This document shows, one piece after another, positions 1 through 55,508 of a stretch of DNA of 64,000 nt. The notes under the pieces were generated by a model. It was not told where the DNA came from, did no database searches, and saw only the letters and a list, made by a program, of their open reading frames with translations. The translations under genes were made by a program, and so were the position numbers. The stretch covers positions 124,001 through 188,000 of the IMG/VR virus record IMGVR_UViG_3300041411_000129; one strand, written 5' to 3'. Each line of letters starts with the position of its first letter. Positions within the stretch are counted from its first letter, which is position 1.

Positions 1-1
1 T

Positions 2-262
2 CCGGGCATCCGCGTTACCACCACCGCTCCGCTGCTGGGCTTCGAGCCCGACTTCCTCGAGGCGCTGTCGCGCTCCCTGGACGCAGCTGACATGTCGAGC
101 TACATGACTGCCGAAGGTGGTCTGAACACTCGTCGTCACGTTGGTGGTAGCAACTGGTCGCAGCTGGCAACTTCCGACATCGGCATCAGCCGTCGTCGTG
201 GTTCCGACCGCACCACCGCTGATCGTGGCCGTGGTGGTCTGTTCGACACCATCGACTACTAA
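2..262 (+). CDS. chmA: Chimallin (major nuclear shell protein), C-terminal fragment, truncated by the window edge
   Basis: Frame 2 is open from the edge to TAA 260-262 and reads PGIRVTTTAPLLGFEPDFLEALSRSLDAADM...RGRGGLFDTIDY. The F-x-P-x-F-x-x-A-L helix resembles the chimallin C-terminal region. It lies directly upstream of the nvRNAP beta'-N gene, as gp54-gp55 do in phiKZ. Confidence 0.75.
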   Translation, partial: PGIRVTTTAPLLGFEPDFLEALSRSLDAADMSSYMTAEGGLNTRRHVGGSNWSQLATSDIGISRRRGSDRTTADRGRGGLFDTIDY

Positions 263-48583: not shown

Positions 48584-49771
48584 TTACTCGCCTTTGGAGT
48601 CGTACTGTCGAAGGCTTGCGTTGGCGTGCAGATACGCCGACTGAGCAATACCGCCGACCAACGGCAGCATGGTGCGTGGACCAGTGCCGATGCGGGCCAG
48701 GATCTTGGAAACGATCGCAGGACCTTGCTTAACGCGGGACTTGTCGTAAGTACCGTTAGCGCGCTTCAGATCGCTGATAGCGATCCGCAGATCACGCTTG
48801 GTTTCGTCCATCCACTTAGCAACGTCAGTCAGACCACGAATGATGTCACGGATCTCGCCGAAGCCGCAGACGAAAGTACCTTCAGCGATCTTGGTTTCCG
48901 ATTTGGTAACCTTGATAGCCGCGTTCAGAACGTTGAGGTCGTTATCGCCGGCGGAGACAGTGACTACGTTCAGGCCAGGGAACTCGTAGAACTCGTTCGA
49001 GCCGTTAGGAGTACCTTGTGGCAGATCGGCTTCGCTGACTTCCTGACCGCCTTTCAGCTTGTCAGTAACGGTAGCGCCCAGCTTGGCGTACATCTTGACC
49101 CAATCACCGGCCAGGAGCTTACCAAAGTTGGTAGCAGTATCCAACGCCTGTTTCGGAGTCAGAGTCTTCTGAGTAGTCTGCAAGTAAGCAGCCCACTTAG
49201 GAGCACCATCGAACTTATCTTTCTTCAGAGTGCCAGCAGCCTGGTTCTGACGAGAGATCAAGTTGTCGCGCATTCTGTAAACGGCAGACTCGGTCTTACC
49301 GTAGTTGTTCATCAGACCGGTCAGCATCTCGGCCAGCTTAGCGCAAGCGGCTTTGAAAGCTTCCCACATGCGAGCCAGCAGACCTTTCGACTTACCTTCA
49401 GTTTCCTGACGGTTCTCGAAGCTGGTCTGATGGACGCCGATGGATTCGAACGATGCCGAGAACACCGCATCAGGAACTGGCAGGTCAGCAGCGCGCAGGA
49501 TGTTACCAACGCCCAACTGGTACTGGCGCGCAGTCTTGGCGTTCCAGTTATCGGCCGGTACACGATCCATGAAGTCAGAAACGAACGACTCGAGGGATAC
49601 GGTTACTTCGGCGATGCTTTCAACGTTGCGGCTACCTTCAGCGATTTCGGCATCGCTTACAGCAGCGTCAGATACGCATTCAGCGATCTCGCCAATTACC
49701 ACGTCAGTTGGGTTCTCTTCCAACATCATGGCATCAGCGGCTTGCTGTAGTGGATCGTCGTGTACAATCAT
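48584..49771 (-). CDS. Internal head/ejection protein paralog
   Basis: VSLES, ASFES and TSFE sites, then GLLARMWEAFK; ATG 49771 with GAGG RBS. Confidence 0.8.
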   Translation of the reverse strand: MIVHDDPLQQAADAMMLEENPTDVVIGEIAECVSDAAVSDAEIAEGSRNVESIAEVTVSLESFVSDFMDRVPADNWNAKTARQYQLGVGNILRAADLPVPDAVFSASFESIGVHQTSFENRQETEGKSKGLLARMWEAFKAACAKLAEMLTGLMNNYGKTESAVYRMRDNLISRQNQAAGTLKKDKFDGAPKWAAYLQTTQKTLTPKQALDTATNFGKLLAGDWVKMYAKLGATVTDKLKGGQEVSEADLPQGTPNGSNEFYEFPGLNVVTVSAGDNDLNVLNAAIKVTKSETKIAEGTFVCGFGEIRDIIRGLTDVAKWMDETKRDLRIAISDLKRANGTYDKSRVKQGPAIVSKILARIGTGPRTMLPLVGGIAQSAYLHANASLRQYDSKGE

Positions 49772-49779
49772 GGGAAACC

Positions 49780-51009
49780 TCAGTTGTAAGCGTTGGCACA
49801 CTCGTCGATGTAACGAATGCTTGCCTTGATGGTTTTGAGGAAGTACGGGGTGGCGTTAATCCAACCCTGTGCTGCCAAGCTGCATGCTTTGTTCAGGGAG
49901 CTGAACGCAGTCCGGAGTACTGCTACATCAGTCTTATCGTTGTGGGCGGTAACGCTCTTGGAGAGTTTGCCGACCTTATCGGTAATGGCTGTGAAAGCAT
50001 TCATCTCACGTTTGAGACTAACGAGGACTTTGAGTCCATCATTACAAACGGTGATGCCTGTTTTCAATTCAGCTACAGAAAGCAGATCAGCTTTCGTATT
50101 GTTCGCTACAGCCGACTGGTTGATCTTGATCTTAGTCCCCATGATCGGATTAGCCCCAGCACCCGGAGTCAATTCCAGATAATGGTTAGGGGTAATATCG
50201 ATCTTGACCGGTTTCATCGCCAGCGACTTCTCAGCGAACTCGGTAACACTCTTACCGACTTTATCCGCATCCAGTCCAGCGACGTTAGTCGGTAGAGGGA
50301 ACTCAACCAAACTCTTCCAGCCACCGCGCCATTCGATCGCGAAGTCTTCGAAGTAAGCGACTGCTTGAACGACGTGACGACTAGGCGGTTCGATACGCGA
50401 ATGTTTGTCCGTAAGATAGGCAGCGACCTTACCTACGTTAACATCTTCGACCGTAGCCTTAGCATCAGCCTTGATTAAGGAAACCTTCTCCGTAACCTTA
50501 TCGAGATAGTTCTCGACAGACTTACCGCTGTCAGTCAGATTCTCCCAGAAGGAAACGAACGCATCGGCGACAGCTTTCATCGCTACATGAAGCCACGTCA
50601 GAATACGACGGATGATGCCGTCCTTCTTCTCAGCGACTTCAGTGCTGTAGTTCCCGTTACTCGCTTCGAACGACGGTACAATCATTGTTGCGGGGATGTA
50701 GATATCCGCGTTAACGAGAATGGCTTCAACCGACAGACGTAGAAGATCAGCGTCGCCTTCATCGAATCCATCCGCGCCACAAGCGGCGATACTCTTATCC
50801 ACCAAATCCGTCAGGTTATCGGACACACCAGCCGCAATGGAGATCTCATCGGAATGACCCTCCACTTCAGCCGCAATATGAGACAGCTTCTCGATATTGC
50901 CGTCAGCCAGATCCGAGGCCTCGATAATGGAATCTTCGAGGCTCAGATGAATGACTGGACGTGGTGTCGACGCTGACTGGGCGAGTCTTTGAAGAATACT
51001 AGCAGTCAT
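49780..51009 (-). CDS. Internal head/ejection protein paralog
   Basis: LSLED, PSFE and YSTEVAEKKDGIIRRILTW. Confidence 0.8.
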   Translation of the reverse strand: MTASILQRLAQSASTPRPVIHLSLEDSIIEASDLADGNIEKLSHIAAEVEGHSDEISIAAGVSDNLTDLVDKSIAACGADGFDEGDADLLRLSVEAILVNADIYIPATMIVPSFEASNGNYSTEVAEKKDGIIRRILTWLHVAMKAVADAFVSFWENLTDSGKSVENYLDKVTEKVSLIKADAKATVEDVNVGKVAAYLTDKHSRIEPPSRHVVQAVAYFEDFAIEWRGGWKSLVEFPLPTNVAGLDADKVGKSVTEFAEKSLAMKPVKIDITPNHYLELTPGAGANPIMGTKIKINQSAVANNTKADLLSVAELKTGITVCNDGLKVLVSLKREMNAFTAITDKVGKLSKSVTAHNDKTDVAVLRTAFSSLNKACSLAAQGWINATPYFLKTIKASIRYIDECANAYN

Positions 51010-51022
51010 TGTCTGTCACCGG

Positions 51023-52450
51023 TTACTTGGCGTGATCGTAGGTGTTGCCCTGGTTGTTACCGGCAGCATTTGCACGATAGCGCTCAGGACGAACCACTTC
51101 AGGCTCATCTTCTTTGGTATCGCTACCACCAGCGCCACCTTTGATCTTGCTGGCCGACAGGTCGCAATAGCGCATGTTGGCTTTGAGCATCATCAGGAAG
51201 TCAGGAACCGACTTGGTCCAGCCCTGAGACATTACACGGCAACCGCCGAGGATACCGTTGACCCACAGACGCAGCTCAGGATCGATCTTCGCGCCACCCA
51301 TGCTTTCAGCCATCTTCAGACGACCGAGGATGGTATTGCAAGCCTTGACCACTGCGTCAGCGCCTTTGGTCCAGCTGGAAACGTCTTTCTCGATGACCTT
51401 CATGATGTCGAGGGCCTTCAGAGCCAGCGTGCAACCGCTCAGCATTTCAGCGTGCTTCAAGACCTTACCGGTGTGAGCAGCCTTCTCTTTGATGACGGCA
51501 CGTTCCAGTTCGACCTTGGCGCCGTTGAGAGGCCACTTGCTATCTTCGCCAGGGATCAGCTTGATAGTGCTGGTCTCGGAGATCTTGATGTCCTTCAGCT
51601 TGGACATGTCGTTCTTCATCGAACGGTTCAGGTTATCGACCGCCGTATTGAGGAACGTGGTGATCGGACCGACGTCGTTCATGCTCGAAGGCGGCTTGAT
51701 GTCCACCAGATCTTCGAACGCGCCGTGCCAGGCCGAAACGAAGTTCTTGAACAGACCCACGTTGGTCTGAACGATCGCAGCAGGTGGCTTGACCACGCCG
51801 GAAGCGTTCGCGCAATACGCGCCAATGCTCGCACCGAGATTGATGGTGCCTTCTTCGGTCTCGCCTTTGTTCTTGTTGATCTTCGCCAATACAGCGGTGC
51901 CGTATTTGCCGATCGACTTGCTGTTGTTGAACAGACGGTGCCAGAACTTGGCAACCATAGCCATCAGGCTCTTGAACGCTTCAGCTACCCAGCTAAGGAT
52001 ACGGCCGATAACGCCCTTCTTCTTTTCTTCAGCTTCCGTTGAGTAGTCCGAACGGCTAGCGCAGGATTCGAAAGAAGGAACCACGACACCTACTGGAATG
52101 CCCAGGCCGGAGACCTTCAGAACGGCTTCCACCGAGATGAACATCAGTGCAGCACCTTCTTCGGTGATACCGCTGGCGCCGTAGGTTTCGATAGTCTGGT
52201 CGACGATCGCTTCGATAGAGCCGGCTGCTGCCTCAGCTTTATCGATGGAGGCATTCTGCCCATTGATGTCTTCGGAGATAGCATTGATCTCGGCAATGTC
52301 GGCAACGATATCTTGCGACAGTTGTTCGAGTTCTTCACCCTGTACCGGCTCTTCTTCAGGAGCTGGGAGGTTAGCGAAGTCTGGCTGAGCTGGCAGCTCA
52401 GACGATTCAACGCCGTAGTTAGCAAGTTGCTGCAAGATGGATGGAGGCAT
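51023..52450 (-). CDS. Internal head/ejection protein paralog
   Basis: PSFES and YSTEAEEKKKGVIGRILSW; ATG 52450 with AAGGA RBS. Confidence 0.8.
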   Translation of the reverse strand: MPPSILQQLANYGVESSELPAQPDFANLPAPEEEPVQGEELEQLSQDIVADIAEINAISEDINGQNASIDKAEAAAGSIEAIVDQTIETYGASGITEEGAALMFISVEAVLKVSGLGIPVGVVVPSFESCASRSDYSTEAEEKKKGVIGRILSWVAEAFKSLMAMVAKFWHRLFNNSKSIGKYGTAVLAKINKNKGETEEGTINLGASIGAYCANASGVVKPPAAIVQTNVGLFKNFVSAWHGAFEDLVDIKPPSSMNDVGPITTFLNTAVDNLNRSMKNDMSKLKDIKISETSTIKLIPGEDSKWPLNGAKVELERAVIKEKAAHTGKVLKHAEMLSGCTLALKALDIMKVIEKDVSSWTKGADAVVKACNTILGRLKMAESMGGAKIDPELRLWVNGILGGCRVMSQGWTKSVPDFLMMLKANMRYCDLSASKIKGGAGGSDTKEDEPEVVRPERYRANAAGNNQGNTYDHAK

Positions 52451-52487
52451 GGCTATGTCCTTGGTAATGACGTACGTGAAACGATGA

Positions 52488-53864
52488 TTAAGCGGCTTTG
52501 GAATAGGCCGAGGCGCTGGCGCTGACATAACCGTCAAGTGCAGACTTAACTGCCCAGATAGTTTTGATCAGCTTAGGGGGAAGCATCCCGAGATCGTACA
52601 TAACGTCGACGGCCAGCTTGTAGGCGTCACACGCTTCTTTGATCGCAGTGGTATCTTCGTTGGCTGCCTTCTTCTTGCTGTACAGAGCGTTCAGTTGAGA
52701 GCTCATGTCAAACAGTTTGGTAGCCATGCCGTCGATCTCTTCAGCAGCATCCTGAAGAGGTTTGATGAAATCGCCAACATGGTCAGTCCATGCGGGAACT
52801 GCATCGGTGTAGTCTTGCATATCCTGAGCGCTGAGCGCTGGATACTCACCACCCTCGGCTTCCTTGTGAACCACCATGTTGCTATTGAGGTTCATGGAGT
52901 TGCCTTTACGCTCGCCAGTCAGAACGATGTCGATGTTCTTACTCACGTTGAACTCGACTTCTTTCGCTTGACCGAGTCCGACAGCATTGAGGAGAGCGGT
53001 CAGCACCCGAGGGAGTTCACTTTCCTTCGTCGGCTGTACGCCATTGACGATCGAGCTGACTTTCTTAACCATTTCCAGAACGCGGTCAGCTGAGTGCTTG
53101 CCGAAACCTTTGAGATCCTTGAGAGTCTCAGTAGGCTTCTTAGCCCGACCATCTTGCCCGATGATGAACTTAGGGTCCTTAACAGTAACCTTAGTGCTTG
53201 GAGTAGACGGAGCTGCTTTAGGAGCCGCTTTCGGTTCTTCCTTCTTCGGTTCTGGTTCGGGCTTCTTCGGTGGAGGAGATGTCGGTTTCTCAGCAGGCTT
53301 AGCCGCTGGCTTGACCTCAGACTCTTCCTCCTTCTCAGCCGGCTTCTCTTCAGCAGGCGCGTCGCCGTCAACGGCTGCATCAACCTTCTTCTTCAGAGCT
53401 TCGTTCTTGGCCTGGTCGTTCTTCTTGAACAGACCCAGCTTCTGGAAGAACGCCTTCAGCATTCCCATGAGGGTAGTGAAGGTACGCTTGATCCATGCCC
53501 AGATCTTACCAATGAAGCCCTCGCTCTTCTCCTCAGCTTCCGTTGAGTAGTTCTCAGGAACGCTGGATTCGAAGGACGGAGCAAGCATCGTAACTGGGAG
53601 ATCCAGATCAGACGCCATCAGAACCGACTCCATACAAACACGATAAAGCGCAGCGCGCTCTACGTCCATGGATGGCTTGTCGTTAATGAAGGCGTCACGA
53701 ATGTTCTTCACCGAAGCGAGGGTCGCACGAGCTCGAACAATCTGGGTTTGAAGCACATCCATCTCGTGGAAATCGGATTGCATGTCCACGCTTTCGAAGC
53801 TATAAGCAGCTTCTACTCGCCCGATGTTGTTGTTGGCTAGCTGTTTCAAAATGCTCGCGGTCAT
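52488..53864 (-). CDS. Internal head/ejection protein paralog with a Pro/Glu/Lys linker
   Basis: YSFES, PSFES and YSTEAEEKSEGFIGKIWAW. Confidence 0.8.
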   Translation of the reverse strand: MTASILKQLANNNIGRVEAAYSFESVDMQSDFHEMDVLQTQIVRARATLASVKNIRDAFINDKPSMDVERAALYRVCMESVLMASDLDLPVTMLAPSFESSVPENYSTEAEEKSEGFIGKIWAWIKRTFTTLMGMLKAFFQKLGLFKKNDQAKNEALKKKVDAAVDGDAPAEEKPAEKEEESEVKPAAKPAEKPTSPPPKKPEPEPKKEEPKAAPKAAPSTPSTKVTVKDPKFIIGQDGRAKKPTETLKDLKGFGKHSADRVLEMVKKVSSIVNGVQPTKESELPRVLTALLNAVGLGQAKEVEFNVSKNIDIVLTGERKGNSMNLNSNMVVHKEAEGGEYPALSAQDMQDYTDAVPAWTDHVGDFIKPLQDAAEEIDGMATKLFDMSSQLNALYSKKKAANEDTTAIKEACDAYKLAVDVMYDLGMLPPKLIKTIWAVKSALDGYVSASASAYSKAA

Positions 53865-53956
53865 TTTACACACTCGACTAGAGTATTATGCAAAGATCGA
53901 GAAGACCTCGCTCGGCGGATTATTACTTACATAAGATCTCCCTAAAGGAACGATTA

Positions 53957-54304
53957 ATGAAGATTGGATCGGTCCAAGATGTTGAGTTCGAAACCACTCA
54001 ACACGGCAATGTAATCCCTGTTCTGAAGATACAATCTGGAAGAACTAAGTTCGATTACAAACTCCCCAACATTCATGTACTTCAAGAGATGAAGTTGTGG
54101 ATGGCAGACATCGTGATGTTCACTGAGAAAGCCGGTAAGACTTCCTGCAAGGTATTAATGGAGAACCGTCCCATTGATGCTAGTCCTGTCGAACTACCAC
54201 ACACCTGCCAATCGTGTGGAGAAGAACTCCACATCTATCTAGAACGGCGACTGATCGTCAAGTGCGTTAATCAGTCTGGATGTAAGGCTCAGAATGTAGG
54301 ATGA
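53957..54304 (+). CDS. Standalone OB-fold plus C4 zinc-finger module resembling NAD-dependent DNA ligase (LigA) domains, without an adenylation domain
   Basis: VQDVEFETTQHGNVIPVL, LPNIHVLQEMKLWMADIV...KAG and PHTCQSCGEEL...KCVNQSGCKAQ align by eye to the LigA OB and Zn-finger; AAGGA RBS before ATG 53957. Confidence 0.7.
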   Translation: MKIGSVQDVEFETTQHGNVIPVLKIQSGRTKFDYKLPNIHVLQEMKLWMADIVMFTEKAGKTSCKVLMENRPIDASPVELPHTCQSCGEELHIYLERRLIVKCVNQSGCKAQNVG

Positions 54305-54308
54305 CGCT

Positions 54309-54761
54309 ATGCTACTGGATGTCAAAGGCGACATGTTCAAACGCGCCCCAAAGGGATCGTTAGTCGGCATTCCCGTTAATACCGTCGGAGTAGGCGGGAA
54401 GGGTCTGGCGTGTCTAATGAAGCTGCGTTGGCCAGAGGCGTACAAGAAGTATTGCAAAGATTGTAGACGCGGTAGGATCGCATCAGGAGAGCTCTGCGTG
54501 TATGACGTAGGGGACTATCGTCTCGCTATGCTACCAACTAAGTACTACTGGGGTAATCCTTCCGATAAAGGCCTGATCACAATCACGGCTAAAAGACTCC
54601 TTGCCTACATGGAAGGTACGTTCGAGGAAGATTGCTACATCCCTCAACTCGGATGTGGTGATAAGACTGGAACGTTGGATTATGAAGTTGATGTTCGCCC
54701 TATCCTCGAAGAAGTGTTTGGCGAGGCTGGCGAAACCATTCACGTATTCGATTGGAGCTGA
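54309..54761 (+). CDS. Macrodomain ADP-ribosylhydrolase, DarG-like
   Basis: GDMF, PVNTVGVGGKGLA, LPTKYYW and IPQLGCG motifs. Confidence 0.88.
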   Translation: MLLDVKGDMFKRAPKGSLVGIPVNTVGVGGKGLACLMKLRWPEAYKKYCKDCRRGRIASGELCVYDVGDYRLAMLPTKYYWGNPSDKGLITITAKRLLAYMEGTFEEDCYIPQLGCGDKTGTLDYEVDVRPILEEVFGEAGETIHVFDWS

Positions 54762-54764
54762 CAG

Positions 54765-55019
54765 ATGTTCAAAGAGCTGGATGCGAAGATACAGCAAGAT
54801 CTGGTTGCGTTAGGCAAAGAGATCTGGGCTGAGTTTAATATCGATGTACCTGCGCCTGTTGAGGTGTATATCTCACGAGTTGATCAATACCTCAGTCGCC
54901 TACACACTCGGACTCCTCCTGAATTCGAGGTAACTGTAGATGCGGATGGTACATTCACCGTTTATACCCCAGTGAGTAAACCCGTATGTCCTCTAACGAT
55001 AGTAGCAACCCGCCGGTAA
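54765..55019 (+). CDS. Small hypothetical protein
   Basis: 84 aa with GGAG RBS. Confidence 0.7.
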   Translation: MFKELDAKIQQDLVALGKEIWAEFNIDVPAPVEVYISRVDQYLSRLHTRTPPEFEVTVDADGTFTVYTPVSKPVCPLTIVATRR

Positions 55020-55024
55020 GAACC

Positions 55025-55390
55025 ATGGCTTTCGAGAGCGCTCAGATCGAACGCATCGAAGCGTGGTTGATCGGTGAAGGCTGGACTGTTAATCGCTTCG
55101 ATTATAGCCTGACACCTTCCTGTGCTGAAGTGAACTACCGCGCCAAGACATTCCGTTCGAACATCAGCAGCGCCTATTACTGTGCGCAAGTGTTTGAGCG
55201 CGTTGAGAACAACCTCAAGACAAAAGGAGTAACAACCGTTGGAGGATACATGTACGTCTTCAGTGGAGGAGAAACCCACCGTCGGCATGATGGCGGGGAT
55301 TTGTATCAACATAAAGCGCTATCTATCCACCCGGTGGAGTTACCGCGTGCGAAGCCTAAGGCTATTGATGAGCTGATATACCCGGCGTAA
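55025..55390 (+). CDS. Hypothetical protein
   Basis: ATG 55025 follows the upstream stop; ends at a hairpin. Confidence 0.7.
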   Translation: MAFESAQIERIEAWLIGEGWTVNRFDYSLTPSCAEVNYRAKTFRSNISSAYYCAQVFERVENNLKTKGVTTVGGYMYVFSGGETHRRHDGGDLYQHKALSIHPVELPRAKPKAIDELIYPA

Positions 55391-55393
55391 GCG

Positions 55394-55428
55394 GCATACA
55401 TCGCCCGGCCTTGAGCCGGGCTTTATGC
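55394..55428 (+). terminator. Hairpin with CATA/TTTATGC flanks
   Basis: GCCCGGC-CTTGA-GCCGGGC-TTTATGC. Confidence 0.7.
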
Positions 55429-55448
55429 TGCAATCGTAGTCAAAGAAT

Positions 55449-55465
55449 TTACAGTCACACATTGC
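55449..55465 (+). promoter_or_regulatory. Putative early promoter motif variant (TTACAGTCACACATTGC)
   Basis: Nearly identical to the 57859-57876 copy. Confidence 0.55.
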
Positions 55466-55508
55466 CGGAGTACATAAACCAACTGATCAACGAAACTGGA
55501 GATCAATC

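What the first reader, a model, noticed from the sequence alone, without database searches (positions are those of the whole stretch)
53957..54304. Standalone OB-fold plus Zn-finger fragment of NAD-dependent DNA ligase, with no catalytic domain
Seen: a 115-aa ORF with its own RBS whose sequence tracks the LigA OB domain (DVEFETTQHGNVIPVL vs DVEWQVGRTGAITPVA; LPN..LQEMKL..ADIV..KAG vs LHN..IERLDI..GDTV..RAG) and C4 finger (PHTCQSCGEEL...KCVN..GCKAQ vs PTHCPVCGSEL...RCTN..CPAQ). There is no KxDG adenylation domain on either side, and both flanks are intact unrelated genes. Inference: not a decaying ligase but a repurposed nick/ssDNA-binding module, a LigA decoy, or one half of a split ligase whose other half lies elsewhere (this clade splits its RNAPs and DNA polymerase).
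Basis: partly seen in the sequence, partly recalled or inferred. Interest (0 to 1): 0.65.

Follow-up and report, generated by a model that had tools for sequence, protein, structure and literature searches.

The report
Ligase remnant partnered with anti-DarT macrodomain
A jumbo phage keeps only the DNA-gripping piece (OB fold plus zinc finger) of a lost NAD-dependent DNA ligase, under selection and right next to, in relatives fused to, an enzyme that strips defensive ADP-ribose off phage DNA, so a dead ligase seems to have been recycled as a helper module.

Summary
Window 53957-54304 (+) encodes a 115-aa protein that is homologous to, and folds like, the OB fold plus C4 zinc finger of NAD-dependent DNA ligase (LigA). 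The complete 253,921-bp nucleus-forming (chimallin-encoding) jumbo phage genome has no detectable ligase catalytic domain.

The ORF is not an orphan. In related phage contigs the same slot, between a DprA-like gene and a DarG-like macrodomain gene (AdfM, the published anti-DarT2 factor of PhiKZ), holds one of six things:
- an active 554-aa LigA;
- a full-length LigA with all catalytic motifs destroyed;
- an OB-ZnF-HhH piece of 249 aa;
- the OB-ZnF alone (this window and 11 other lineages);
- an in-frame OB-ZnF::macrodomain fusion (13 sequence clusters);
- nothing.

The solo gene is under purifying selection (dN/dS 0.14-0.22). Six of six differences in an independent strain are synonymous.

Best reading: an old, selected relic of a resident phage LigA, reused as a non-catalytic nucleic-acid-binding or targeting partner of AdfM. 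Its biochemical role is inferred, not shown. A split ligase is not supported. A LigA decoy is not excluded. The AdfM paper and the virus NAD-ADPr survey I read, and one full-text search of the held papers, do not describe the association.

The parts
53957..54304 (+). 115-aa LigA-derived OB-fold + C4 zinc-finger protein (P0001). OB is about aa 1-70 (53957-54166). Linker plus Zn finger is aa 71-115 (54167-54301), with Cys 84, 87, 103 and 109.
   Evidence: Purifying selection.
54309..54761 (+). 150-aa DarG-like macrodomain, the AdfM family (anti-DarT2 DNA ADP-ribosyl glycohydrolase). It starts 4 nt after the OB-ZnF stop. The catalytic-site Asn (PVNTVG) and Lys (PTKYYW) are kept.
   Evidence: NCBIfam DarG E 2.5e-20. 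PADLOC DarG E 1e-20. PDB DarG macrodomains 5M31 and 5M3I, E 3e-14 and 6e-13. 38.8% identity to the PhiKZ-group macro proteins. AdfM paper PMC13309987.
53874..53956 (.). Divergent intergenic region with the RBS. It is identical in three phages whose coding DNA differs at dS about 0.5-0.6, apart from one 1-nt indel. Presumed promoter or regulatory region of the unit.
   Evidence: No sigma-70-like site, as expected for a phage with its own RNA polymerases.
54765..55019 (+). 84-aa ORF of unknown function, third gene of the same unit.
   Evidence: no family hit. Also present in L006 and L007.
54986..55390 (+). 134-aa ORF of unknown function, fourth gene of the unit.
   Evidence: A 131-aa gene stands at the matching position in L003, L006 and L015; its homology to this ORF was not tested.
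55403..55421 (+). Terminator-like hairpin (7 G-C pairs, 5-nt loop, T-rich tail) that closes the unit. In other strains all changes fall in the loop or at the loop-stem edges.
52488..53873 (-). Upstream flank: last of a row of paralogous phiKZ-type internal head protein genes. It marks the conserved slot. The DprA-like gene that relatives carry between this gene and the ligase slot is absent here.

Best explanation
The ORF is what remains of a phage NAD-dependent DNA ligase gene. In the ancestor of this chimallivirus clade that gene sat between a DprA-like gene and adfM, the DarG-like macrodomain that removes DarT2-made ADP-ribose from thymidines in single-stranded DNA.

The NAD-binding Ia domain, the nucleotidyltransferase domain and the HhH domain were lost. 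Only the OB fold and the Zn finger were kept. The protein cannot ligate.

I propose that it is made from the same transcript as AdfM and acts as a non-catalytic nucleic-acid-binding or targeting partner of AdfM. It works in trans here and in cis in the sister phages where the two are one polypeptide. On this model it helps the glycohydrolase find or hold its DNA substrate inside the phage nucleus.

Shown: homology and fold; absence of any catalytic ligase domain in the genome; the series of states at the same slot; the fusion family; purifying selection.

Inferred: DNA binding, physical or functional partnership with AdfM, and any effect on de-ADP-ribosylation.
For: 1. Identity as LigA OB + ZnF.

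2. The same slot (phiKZ_IP genes on the minus strand, then DprA-like, then X, then macro) holds different things in relatives:
- an active 554-aa LigA (L033; Pfam aden 6e-49);
- a 559-aa LigA with motif I KxDG, TRGDG, motif IV and motif V all destroyed (P0012 and P0015);
- OB-ZnF-HhH of 249 aa (L039 and L040);
- the solo OB-ZnF;
- a fusion, or nothing.

3. In 11 of 12 solo lineages a 149-161-aa macro gene follows, anywhere from an 11-nt overlap to a 9-nt gap (same calls).

4. The OB-ZnF::macro fusion is real and old. There are 13 clusters at 41-91% identity on contigs up to 266,805 bp. The C4 finger and the macro catalytic residues are invariant. hhalign against the OB-ZnF alignment gives 98.8% probability, E 1e-16. 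P0067 hits both DarG (4e-30) and LigA (1e-6). The model has pLDDT 81, and its macro half matches DarG and TARG1.

5. The complete fusion-bearing genome G002 also carries a separate intact LigA (E 4e-173). The OB-ZnF on the macrodomain is therefore not merely the debris of the phage's only ligase.

6. Selection: dN/dS 0.14-0.22, and a Zn-finger half with dN 0.02. Synonymous-only divergence in that half against a 49%-identical relative. 6 of 6 strain differences are synonymous.

7. The neighbour's function is experimentally known in PhiKZ (PMC13309987). This genome encodes a chimallin homologue.
Against: - The adjacency to the macro gene is inherited from the ancestral LigA-macro gene order. By itself it does not prove coupling.
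- PhiKZ AdfM works alone in vitro and in E. coli, and PhiKZ's upstream gene is unrelated to the OB-ZnF.
- One solo lineage (L031) has no macro gene in the 4 kb downstream.
- Residues that, as I recall from E. coli LigA mutagenesis, are needed for nick sealing are not conserved in the solo family: R333 and T334 (the VGRTG loop) and R379, V383 and I384 (RAGDVIP).
- Net charge is near neutral, which is also true of genuine LigA OB-ZnF segments, so it is uninformative.
- No binding experiment or expression data exist. No RNA run holds the sequence.
Confidence: 0.5

Rival explanations
1. A protein-binding accessory rather than a DNA binder. The OB-ZnF might bind and neutralise DarT2 itself, playing the part of the C-terminal domain of bacterial DarG. 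Or it might serve as an import or assembly adaptor for AdfM at the phage nucleus.
For: - Phage AdfM lacks the DarG C-terminal toxin-binding domain: matches cover only positions 5-147 of 338.
- The most conserved part of the solo family is the Zn-finger end (CGEELHIYLERRL..C), not the OB DNA-contact loops.
- The fusion family also fits this reading.
Against: - No host or DarT2 is known for this phage.
- The fold is that of a known DNA-binding module.
- Nothing here points to a specific protein partner.
Confidence: 0.15
2. A stand-alone nick- or end-binding factor unrelated to AdfM. It could protect or mark nicks, or modulate or compete with the host LigA (decoy or dominant negative). A phage that has no ligase of its own must otherwise rely on the host enzyme.
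For: - The genome has no ligase catalytic domain.
- Full-length but catalytically dead LigA in relatives shows selection for a non-catalytic ligase-scaffold function.
- L031 keeps the solo gene without an adjacent macro gene.
Against: - It does not explain the repeated, conserved fusion to the macrodomain, nor its coexistence with an intact LigA in G002.
- The nick-sealing contact residues are not kept.
Confidence: 0.2
3. A functionless relic of a deleted ligase gene that has simply not yet decayed, or that is kept only as a leader cistron for translational coupling to the macro gene.
For: - Relatives have a full ligase in the same slot.
- One relative has lost the piece altogether (L038).
Against: - There are twelve diverged solo lineages with the same boundaries and an intact C4 finger.
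- dN/dS is 0.14-0.22, with an upper 95% bound of 0.33-0.42.
- The Zn-finger peptide is nearly invariant despite synonymous changes.
- 6 of 6 strain differences are synonymous.
Confidence: 0.07
4. One half of a split NAD-dependent ligase. The catalytic half (with the solo Ia-domain protein encoded 38 kb away) would be too diverged to recognise.
For: - A solo Nlig-Ia ORF exists in the same genome and in relatives G001 and G003.
- Heterodimeric NAD-ligases exist in a phage, PR1 (PDB 9I5I and 9HU3, seen).
Against: - No nucleotidyltransferase domain is found by Pfam, PHROG, tblastn or custom HMMs in any frame of a complete genome.
- There is no HhH domain either.
- Solo Nlig-Ia proteins are known in 81 phages that mostly lack any ligase (PMC9503650).
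- G004 has the Ia ORF but no OB-ZnF at the slot.
Confidence: 0.03

Closest known systems
OB-fold and Zn-finger domains of bacterial and phage NAD-dependent DNA ligase LigA (e.g. E. coli LigA, PDB 2OWO)
   Same: Sequence homology and the same fold over the whole 115 aa. Same C4 finger spacing, and the same RPxDAxPxxxP linker.
   Different: No Ia, nucleotidyltransferase, HhH or BRCT domains. The VGRTG and RAGDVIP elements are degenerate. A short OB loop is deleted. It cannot be a ligase.
AdfM (PhiKZ gp104), the chimallivirus anti-DarT2 macrodomain, and bacterial DarG
   Same: The gene 4 nt downstream belongs to this family. In sister phages the OB-ZnF is part of the same polypeptide.
   Different: Published AdfM is a bare macrodomain. 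The paper contains no mention of 'ligase', 'zinc' or 'OB-fold'. Bacterial DarG carries a C-terminal DarT-binding domain instead, not an N-terminal OB-ZnF.
Solo Nlig-Ia domain proteins of phages (Iyer, Burroughs, Anantharaman, Aravind 2022, PMC9503650)
   Same: Another single LigA domain living on its own in phages that lack the catalytic module. One is encoded in this very genome.
   Different: A different domain (NAD-binding helical Ia, not OB-ZnF), a different locus, a much wider distribution, and a proposed role as NAD sensor. The survey does not report a solo OB-ZnF.
Heterodimeric (split) NAD-dependent ligase of phage PR1 (PDB 9I5I, 9HU3; PHROG 3498)
   Same: LigA domains distributed over separate polypeptides in a phage.
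   Different: There both halves exist and together ligate. Here the catalytic half is absent from a complete genome.
Catalytically dead full-length LigA of related phages (P0012, P0015)
   Same: Same slot and same neighbours. Its OB-ZnF scores as high against the solo-family profile as those of active phage LigAs (55.9 bits, E 5.5e-10) and shares some solo-like residues.
   Different: It still has the whole 559-aa scaffold including HhH. The window's protein is the minimal version.

Membership tests
NAD-dependent DNA ligase (LigA) | Nucleotidyltransferase domain with the motif I lysine (KxDG) | tested here: not met
   Absent from the ORF, its flanks and the whole genome.
NAD-dependent DNA ligase (LigA) | N-terminal NMN/NAD-binding domain Ia | tested here: not met
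   Not in this ORF. A separate 116-aa solo Ia ORF lies 38 kb away (PF22745 E 1.6e-5, just under the cut-off; PHROG 19233 E 4e-20).
NAD-dependent DNA ligase (LigA) | OB-fold domain | tested here: met
   Profile matches. Model and Foldseek hits to LigA.
NAD-dependent DNA ligase (LigA) | C4 zinc finger | tested here: met
   C84, C87, C103 and C109 are invariant or nearly so and aligned to the LigA finger. Metal binding itself is not testable here.
NAD-dependent DNA ligase (LigA) | HhH (and BRCT) DNA-binding domains | tested here: not met
   The ORF ends 6 residues after the fourth Cys. A custom C-terminal HMM finds nothing in the genome.
Split/heterodimeric phage NAD-ligase | A partner subunit carrying the adenylation domain encoded in the same genome | tested here: not met
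   The same holds in the complete relative G003.
AdfM / DarG-type macrodomain (the partner gene, 54309-54761) | Macro fold closest to DarG and TARG1, with the catalytic Lys (PTK) and the conserved Asn (PhiKZ N23) | tested here: met
   (N24 and K78 invariant). Fold shown for the fused homologue. Enzyme activity is not testable here.
Solo/fused LigA-derived OB-ZnF of chimalliviruses (family defined here) | OB + C4 finger only, about 105-130 aa. Encoded directly upstream of, or fused to, an AdfM-type macrodomain next to the phiKZ_IP gene row. | tested here: met
   One exception lacks an adjacent macro gene (L031).

The most novel reading that the evidence does not exclude
A phage has turned the DNA-binding core of its own dead NAD-dependent ligase into a substrate-targeting domain for a DNA ADP-ribosyl glycohydrolase. 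That would create a two-part (or fused) anti-DarT enzyme. Every intermediate of the exaptation is still present in living relatives: active ligase, dead ligase, N-terminally truncated form, minimal OB-ZnF, and fusion.
Probability: 0.4. Interest if true: 0.75.

Novelty: new variant of a known kind. Interest (0 to 1): 0.62.

Why it matters
AdfM was described only in 2026, as the way nucleus-forming phages undo DarT2 ADP-ribosylation of their DNA. A LigA-derived OB-ZnF partner or domain would be the first accessory module reported for it. It would suggest how a bare macrodomain is brought to lesions on DNA.

The locus is also an unusually complete natural series of enzyme-to-binding-module exaptation, which can be tested with simple biochemistry. 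It adds a second LigA domain, after the solo Ia domain, that lives on its own in phages.

It also raises the question of how ligase-less chimalliviruses seal their DNA.

Tried and rejected
- Pfam gave no hit for the ORF. Megablast of the region against known phages found nothing. The closest cultured phages share 35% identity or less in a structural protein.
- Complex prediction of OB-ZnF with the macro protein returned 'no answer' (score 0.00). This is neither support nor evidence against binding.
- A tree of concatenated OB-ZnF + macro was unresolved at depth. It cannot say whether the truncation happened once.
- PhiKZ/SL2 gp103-like upstream gene: no relation to the OB-ZnF.
- The DprA-like gene of relatives is absent from this genome.
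- An alignment-based scan of viral contigs with the solo family failed for lack of a conserved stretch. The macro alignment was used instead.
- Net charge and pI do not discriminate.
- A k-mer search for a repeated promoter motif in the conserved intergenic region was inconclusive.
- No RNA runs hold the locus, so expression is untested.
- No alternative genetic code was used.

Full report
**What is there.**
Window 53957-54304 (+) is a 115-aa ORF with an AGGA ribosome-binding site. Pfam finds nothing in it. Other profiles do. PHROG 3869 ('NAD-dependent DNA ligase') matches at E 3.9e-8 over profile positions 313-421 of 656. The NCBIfam LigA equivalogs match at E about 9e-8 over positions 317-430 of 664. 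PDB LigA chains are the best sequence hits.

A profile of the ORF and five close homologues was searched against 1.84 billion representative proteins. It found eight further standalone proteins of 108-131 aa, and 550-580-aa LigA proteins at E about 5e-10 aligned over their OB + Zn-finger region. An AlphaFold2 model is confident (pLDDT 93.9). Its seven best PDB matches are all LigA (2OWO E 5e-7, TM 0.79, 118 columns). The four cysteines are invariant or nearly so.

**The genome.**
The window lies in a complete 253,921-bp virus record with direct terminal repeats. The record carries phiKZ-type internal head protein genes and a chimallin homologue. It is therefore a nucleus-forming jumbo phage. 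It is only distantly related (35% identity or less) to cultured ones. It recurs in rhizosphere and root metagenomes from many studies.

No ligase catalytic domain was detected:
- PF01653, PF01068 and PF09414 give nothing at E<=10.
- tblastn with two phage LigAs finds only this ORF.
- HMMs built from the N- and C-terminal parts of 20-25 LigA homologues find nothing in any frame. The only exception is a weak hit to a 116-aa ORF 38 kb downstream.

That 116-aa ORF is a solo Nlig-Ia domain (PF22745 E 1.6e-5; PHROG 19233 E 4e-20). This kind of protein is already described in 81 phages (PMC9503650). A split ligase is therefore not supported.

**The neighbour.**
Four nucleotides after the stop codon starts a 150-aa macrodomain gene. 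It matches:
- the DarG antitoxin macrodomain (NCBIfam E 2.5e-20; PADLOC DarG E 1e-20);
- the solved DarG macrodomains 5M31 and 5M3I;
- the PhiKZ-group macro proteins, at 38.8% identity.

PhiKZ gp104 was recently characterised as AdfM. It is imported into the phage nucleus, removes DarT2-made ADP-ribose from TNTC motifs in ssDNA, and protects the phage from DarTG2 (PMC13309987). The catalytic-site Asn and Lys are conserved here.

**The slot in relatives.**
In related phage contigs the gene order is conserved: a row of phiKZ_IP genes on the minus strand, then a DprA-like/SLOG gene (PHROG 768, E 1e-45 to 1e-53), then a variable gene X, then the macro gene, and further on an Arc-like gene and thymidylate genes. 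X takes six forms:
- (a) a canonical 554-aa LigA with Ia, adenylation, OB and Zn domains (L033);
- (b) a 559-aa LigA-like protein with Ia, motif I (KxDG reads TYKS or TYFG), TRGDG, motif IV and motif V all destroyed (P0012 and P0015);
- (c) a 249-aa OB-ZnF-HhH protein (L039 and L040);
- (d) the solo OB-ZnF, in this window and 11 other lineages. The DprA-like gene is present in some of them but absent in this phage's closest group;
- (e) an in-frame OB-ZnF::macro fusion of 262-277 aa (L042 = P0054);
- (f) nothing, with the DprA-like gene abutting the macro gene (L038).

The ORF thus descends from a resident LigA gene. But the truncation is old. Solo forms share the same N- and C-terminal boundaries and have diverged to 25-49% identity. 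A tree could not resolve whether the truncation occurred once.

**Is it functional?**
Pairwise dN/dS is 0.14-0.22. Bootstrap 95% intervals are 0.09-0.33 and 0.11-0.42, and no replicate reaches 1. The Zn-finger half has dN 0.02. Against a 49%-identical relative, that stretch differs almost only synonymously. A variant strain seen at high depth in an independent run differs at six sites in the ORF, and all six are synonymous third positions. Contigs from four independent runs confirm the ORF and the stop/start junction without indels. A functionless relic is strongly disfavoured.

**Link to AdfM.**
The adjacency alone could be inherited synteny. The fusion argues for more.
- It forms 13 clusters at 41-91% identity, on contigs up to 266,805 bp from many samples.
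- The C4 finger and the macro active-site residues are invariant in it.
- Its N-terminal half matches the OB-ZnF alignment at 98.8% probability (E 1e-16).
- One member hits both DarG and LigA models.
- Its model folds with pLDDT 81, and the macro half is closest to DarG and TARG1.
- The complete fusion-bearing genome G002 also has an intact LigA elsewhere (E 4e-173). The OB-ZnF attached to the macrodomain is therefore a dedicated module there, not the leftover of the only ligase.

The existence of full-length but catalytically dead ligases in the same slot further indicates selection for a non-catalytic role of the ligase scaffold.

**Most likely mechanism (inferred).**
The unit appears to run from a conserved intergenic region, through the OB-ZnF, the macro gene and two small ORFs, to a terminator-like hairpin. 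I propose that it makes an OB-ZnF protein that binds nucleic acid and assists AdfM in finding or holding ADP-ribosylated DNA in the phage nucleus.

Caveats:
- PhiKZ AdfM works alone.
- One solo lineage lacks an adjacent macro gene.
- The LigA residues I recall as essential for nick sealing (R333, T334, R379, V383, I384 in E. coli numbering, from memory) are not conserved.
- The complex prediction gave no verdict.

Alternatives are a protein-binding role (DarT2 inhibition or import), an AdfM-independent nick-binding or LigA-modulating role, a relic, or a split ligase. I rank them at about 0.15, 0.20, 0.07 and 0.03.

**Novelty.**
The AdfM paper contains no occurrence of 'ligase', 'zinc', 'OB-fold' or 'DNA-binding'. 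The survey of viral NAD-ADPr systems reports solo Nlig-Ia but, in the passages I read, no solo OB-ZnF and no ligase-macro link. A full-text search for a standalone LigA OB/Zn module in phages found nothing relevant. I rate this as a new variant of known kinds, namely a LigA domain and the AdfM/DarG counter-defence, with an unusually complete evolutionary series.

Noticed in passing
L002:1396-1746 (= G000:C1:215862-216212, outside the window): A 116-aa solo Nlig-Ia (LigA NAD-binding domain Ia) ORF. The YY...D..YD motif is kept. It lies 38 kb from the OB-ZnF. The same pair of solo Ia and solo OB-ZnF, with no catalytic domain, occurs in relatives G001 and G003.
   Followed up: partly
L032:1884-3563 (P0012), and P0015: Full-length 558-559-aa LigA homologues in the same slot with every catalytic motif destroyed (KxDG, TRGDG, motifs IV and V, and the Ia signature). 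These are conserved pseudo-ligases.
   Followed up: partly
L042:3671-4495 (P0054), and P0055-P0067: A family of in-frame OB-ZnF::DarG-like macrodomain fusion proteins (262-277 aa) in related jumbo phages. The complete genome G002 carries the fusion and also an intact LigA at C1:163631-165601.
   Followed up: yes
window 53842-53956: About 115 nt spanning the start of the head-protein gene and the divergent intergenic region are identical in three phages apart from one 1-nt indel, while the flanking coding DNA differs at dS about 0.5-0.6. Probably a constrained promoter or regulatory region. No repeated motif was found.
   Followed up: partly
window 55403-55421: A G+C-rich hairpin followed by a T-rich tail. 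In other strains all substitutions and indels fall in the loop or at the loop-stem edges, consistent with a functional terminator.
   Followed up: partly
window 48584-53873 (- strand): A row of four paralogous 405-504-aa genes. The three whose sequences were examined (49780-53873) share conserved N-terminal motifs, and one of them was scanned and weakly matches Pfam phiKZ_IP (internal head proteins). Relatives carry similar rows.
   Followed up: no
L003:5406-6023, L015:4411-5004, L033:5417-6043 and others: A DprA-like/SLOG gene (PHROG 768) overlaps the start of the ligase-slot gene in most relatives. It is missing from this phage and its closest group. In L038 it directly abuts the macro gene.
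   Followed up: partly
window 1-178 (G000:C1:122964-124178): A chimallin (phage nuclear shell protein) homologue, 24% identical to PhiKZ gp054, ends at the very start of the window.
   Followed up: no
window 53600-55500, run X6: A variant strain of this phage is present at very high contig depth (about 500x) in one rhizosphere metagenome. The phage recurs in root and rhizosphere samples from about 20 studies. The host is unknown.
   Followed up: no
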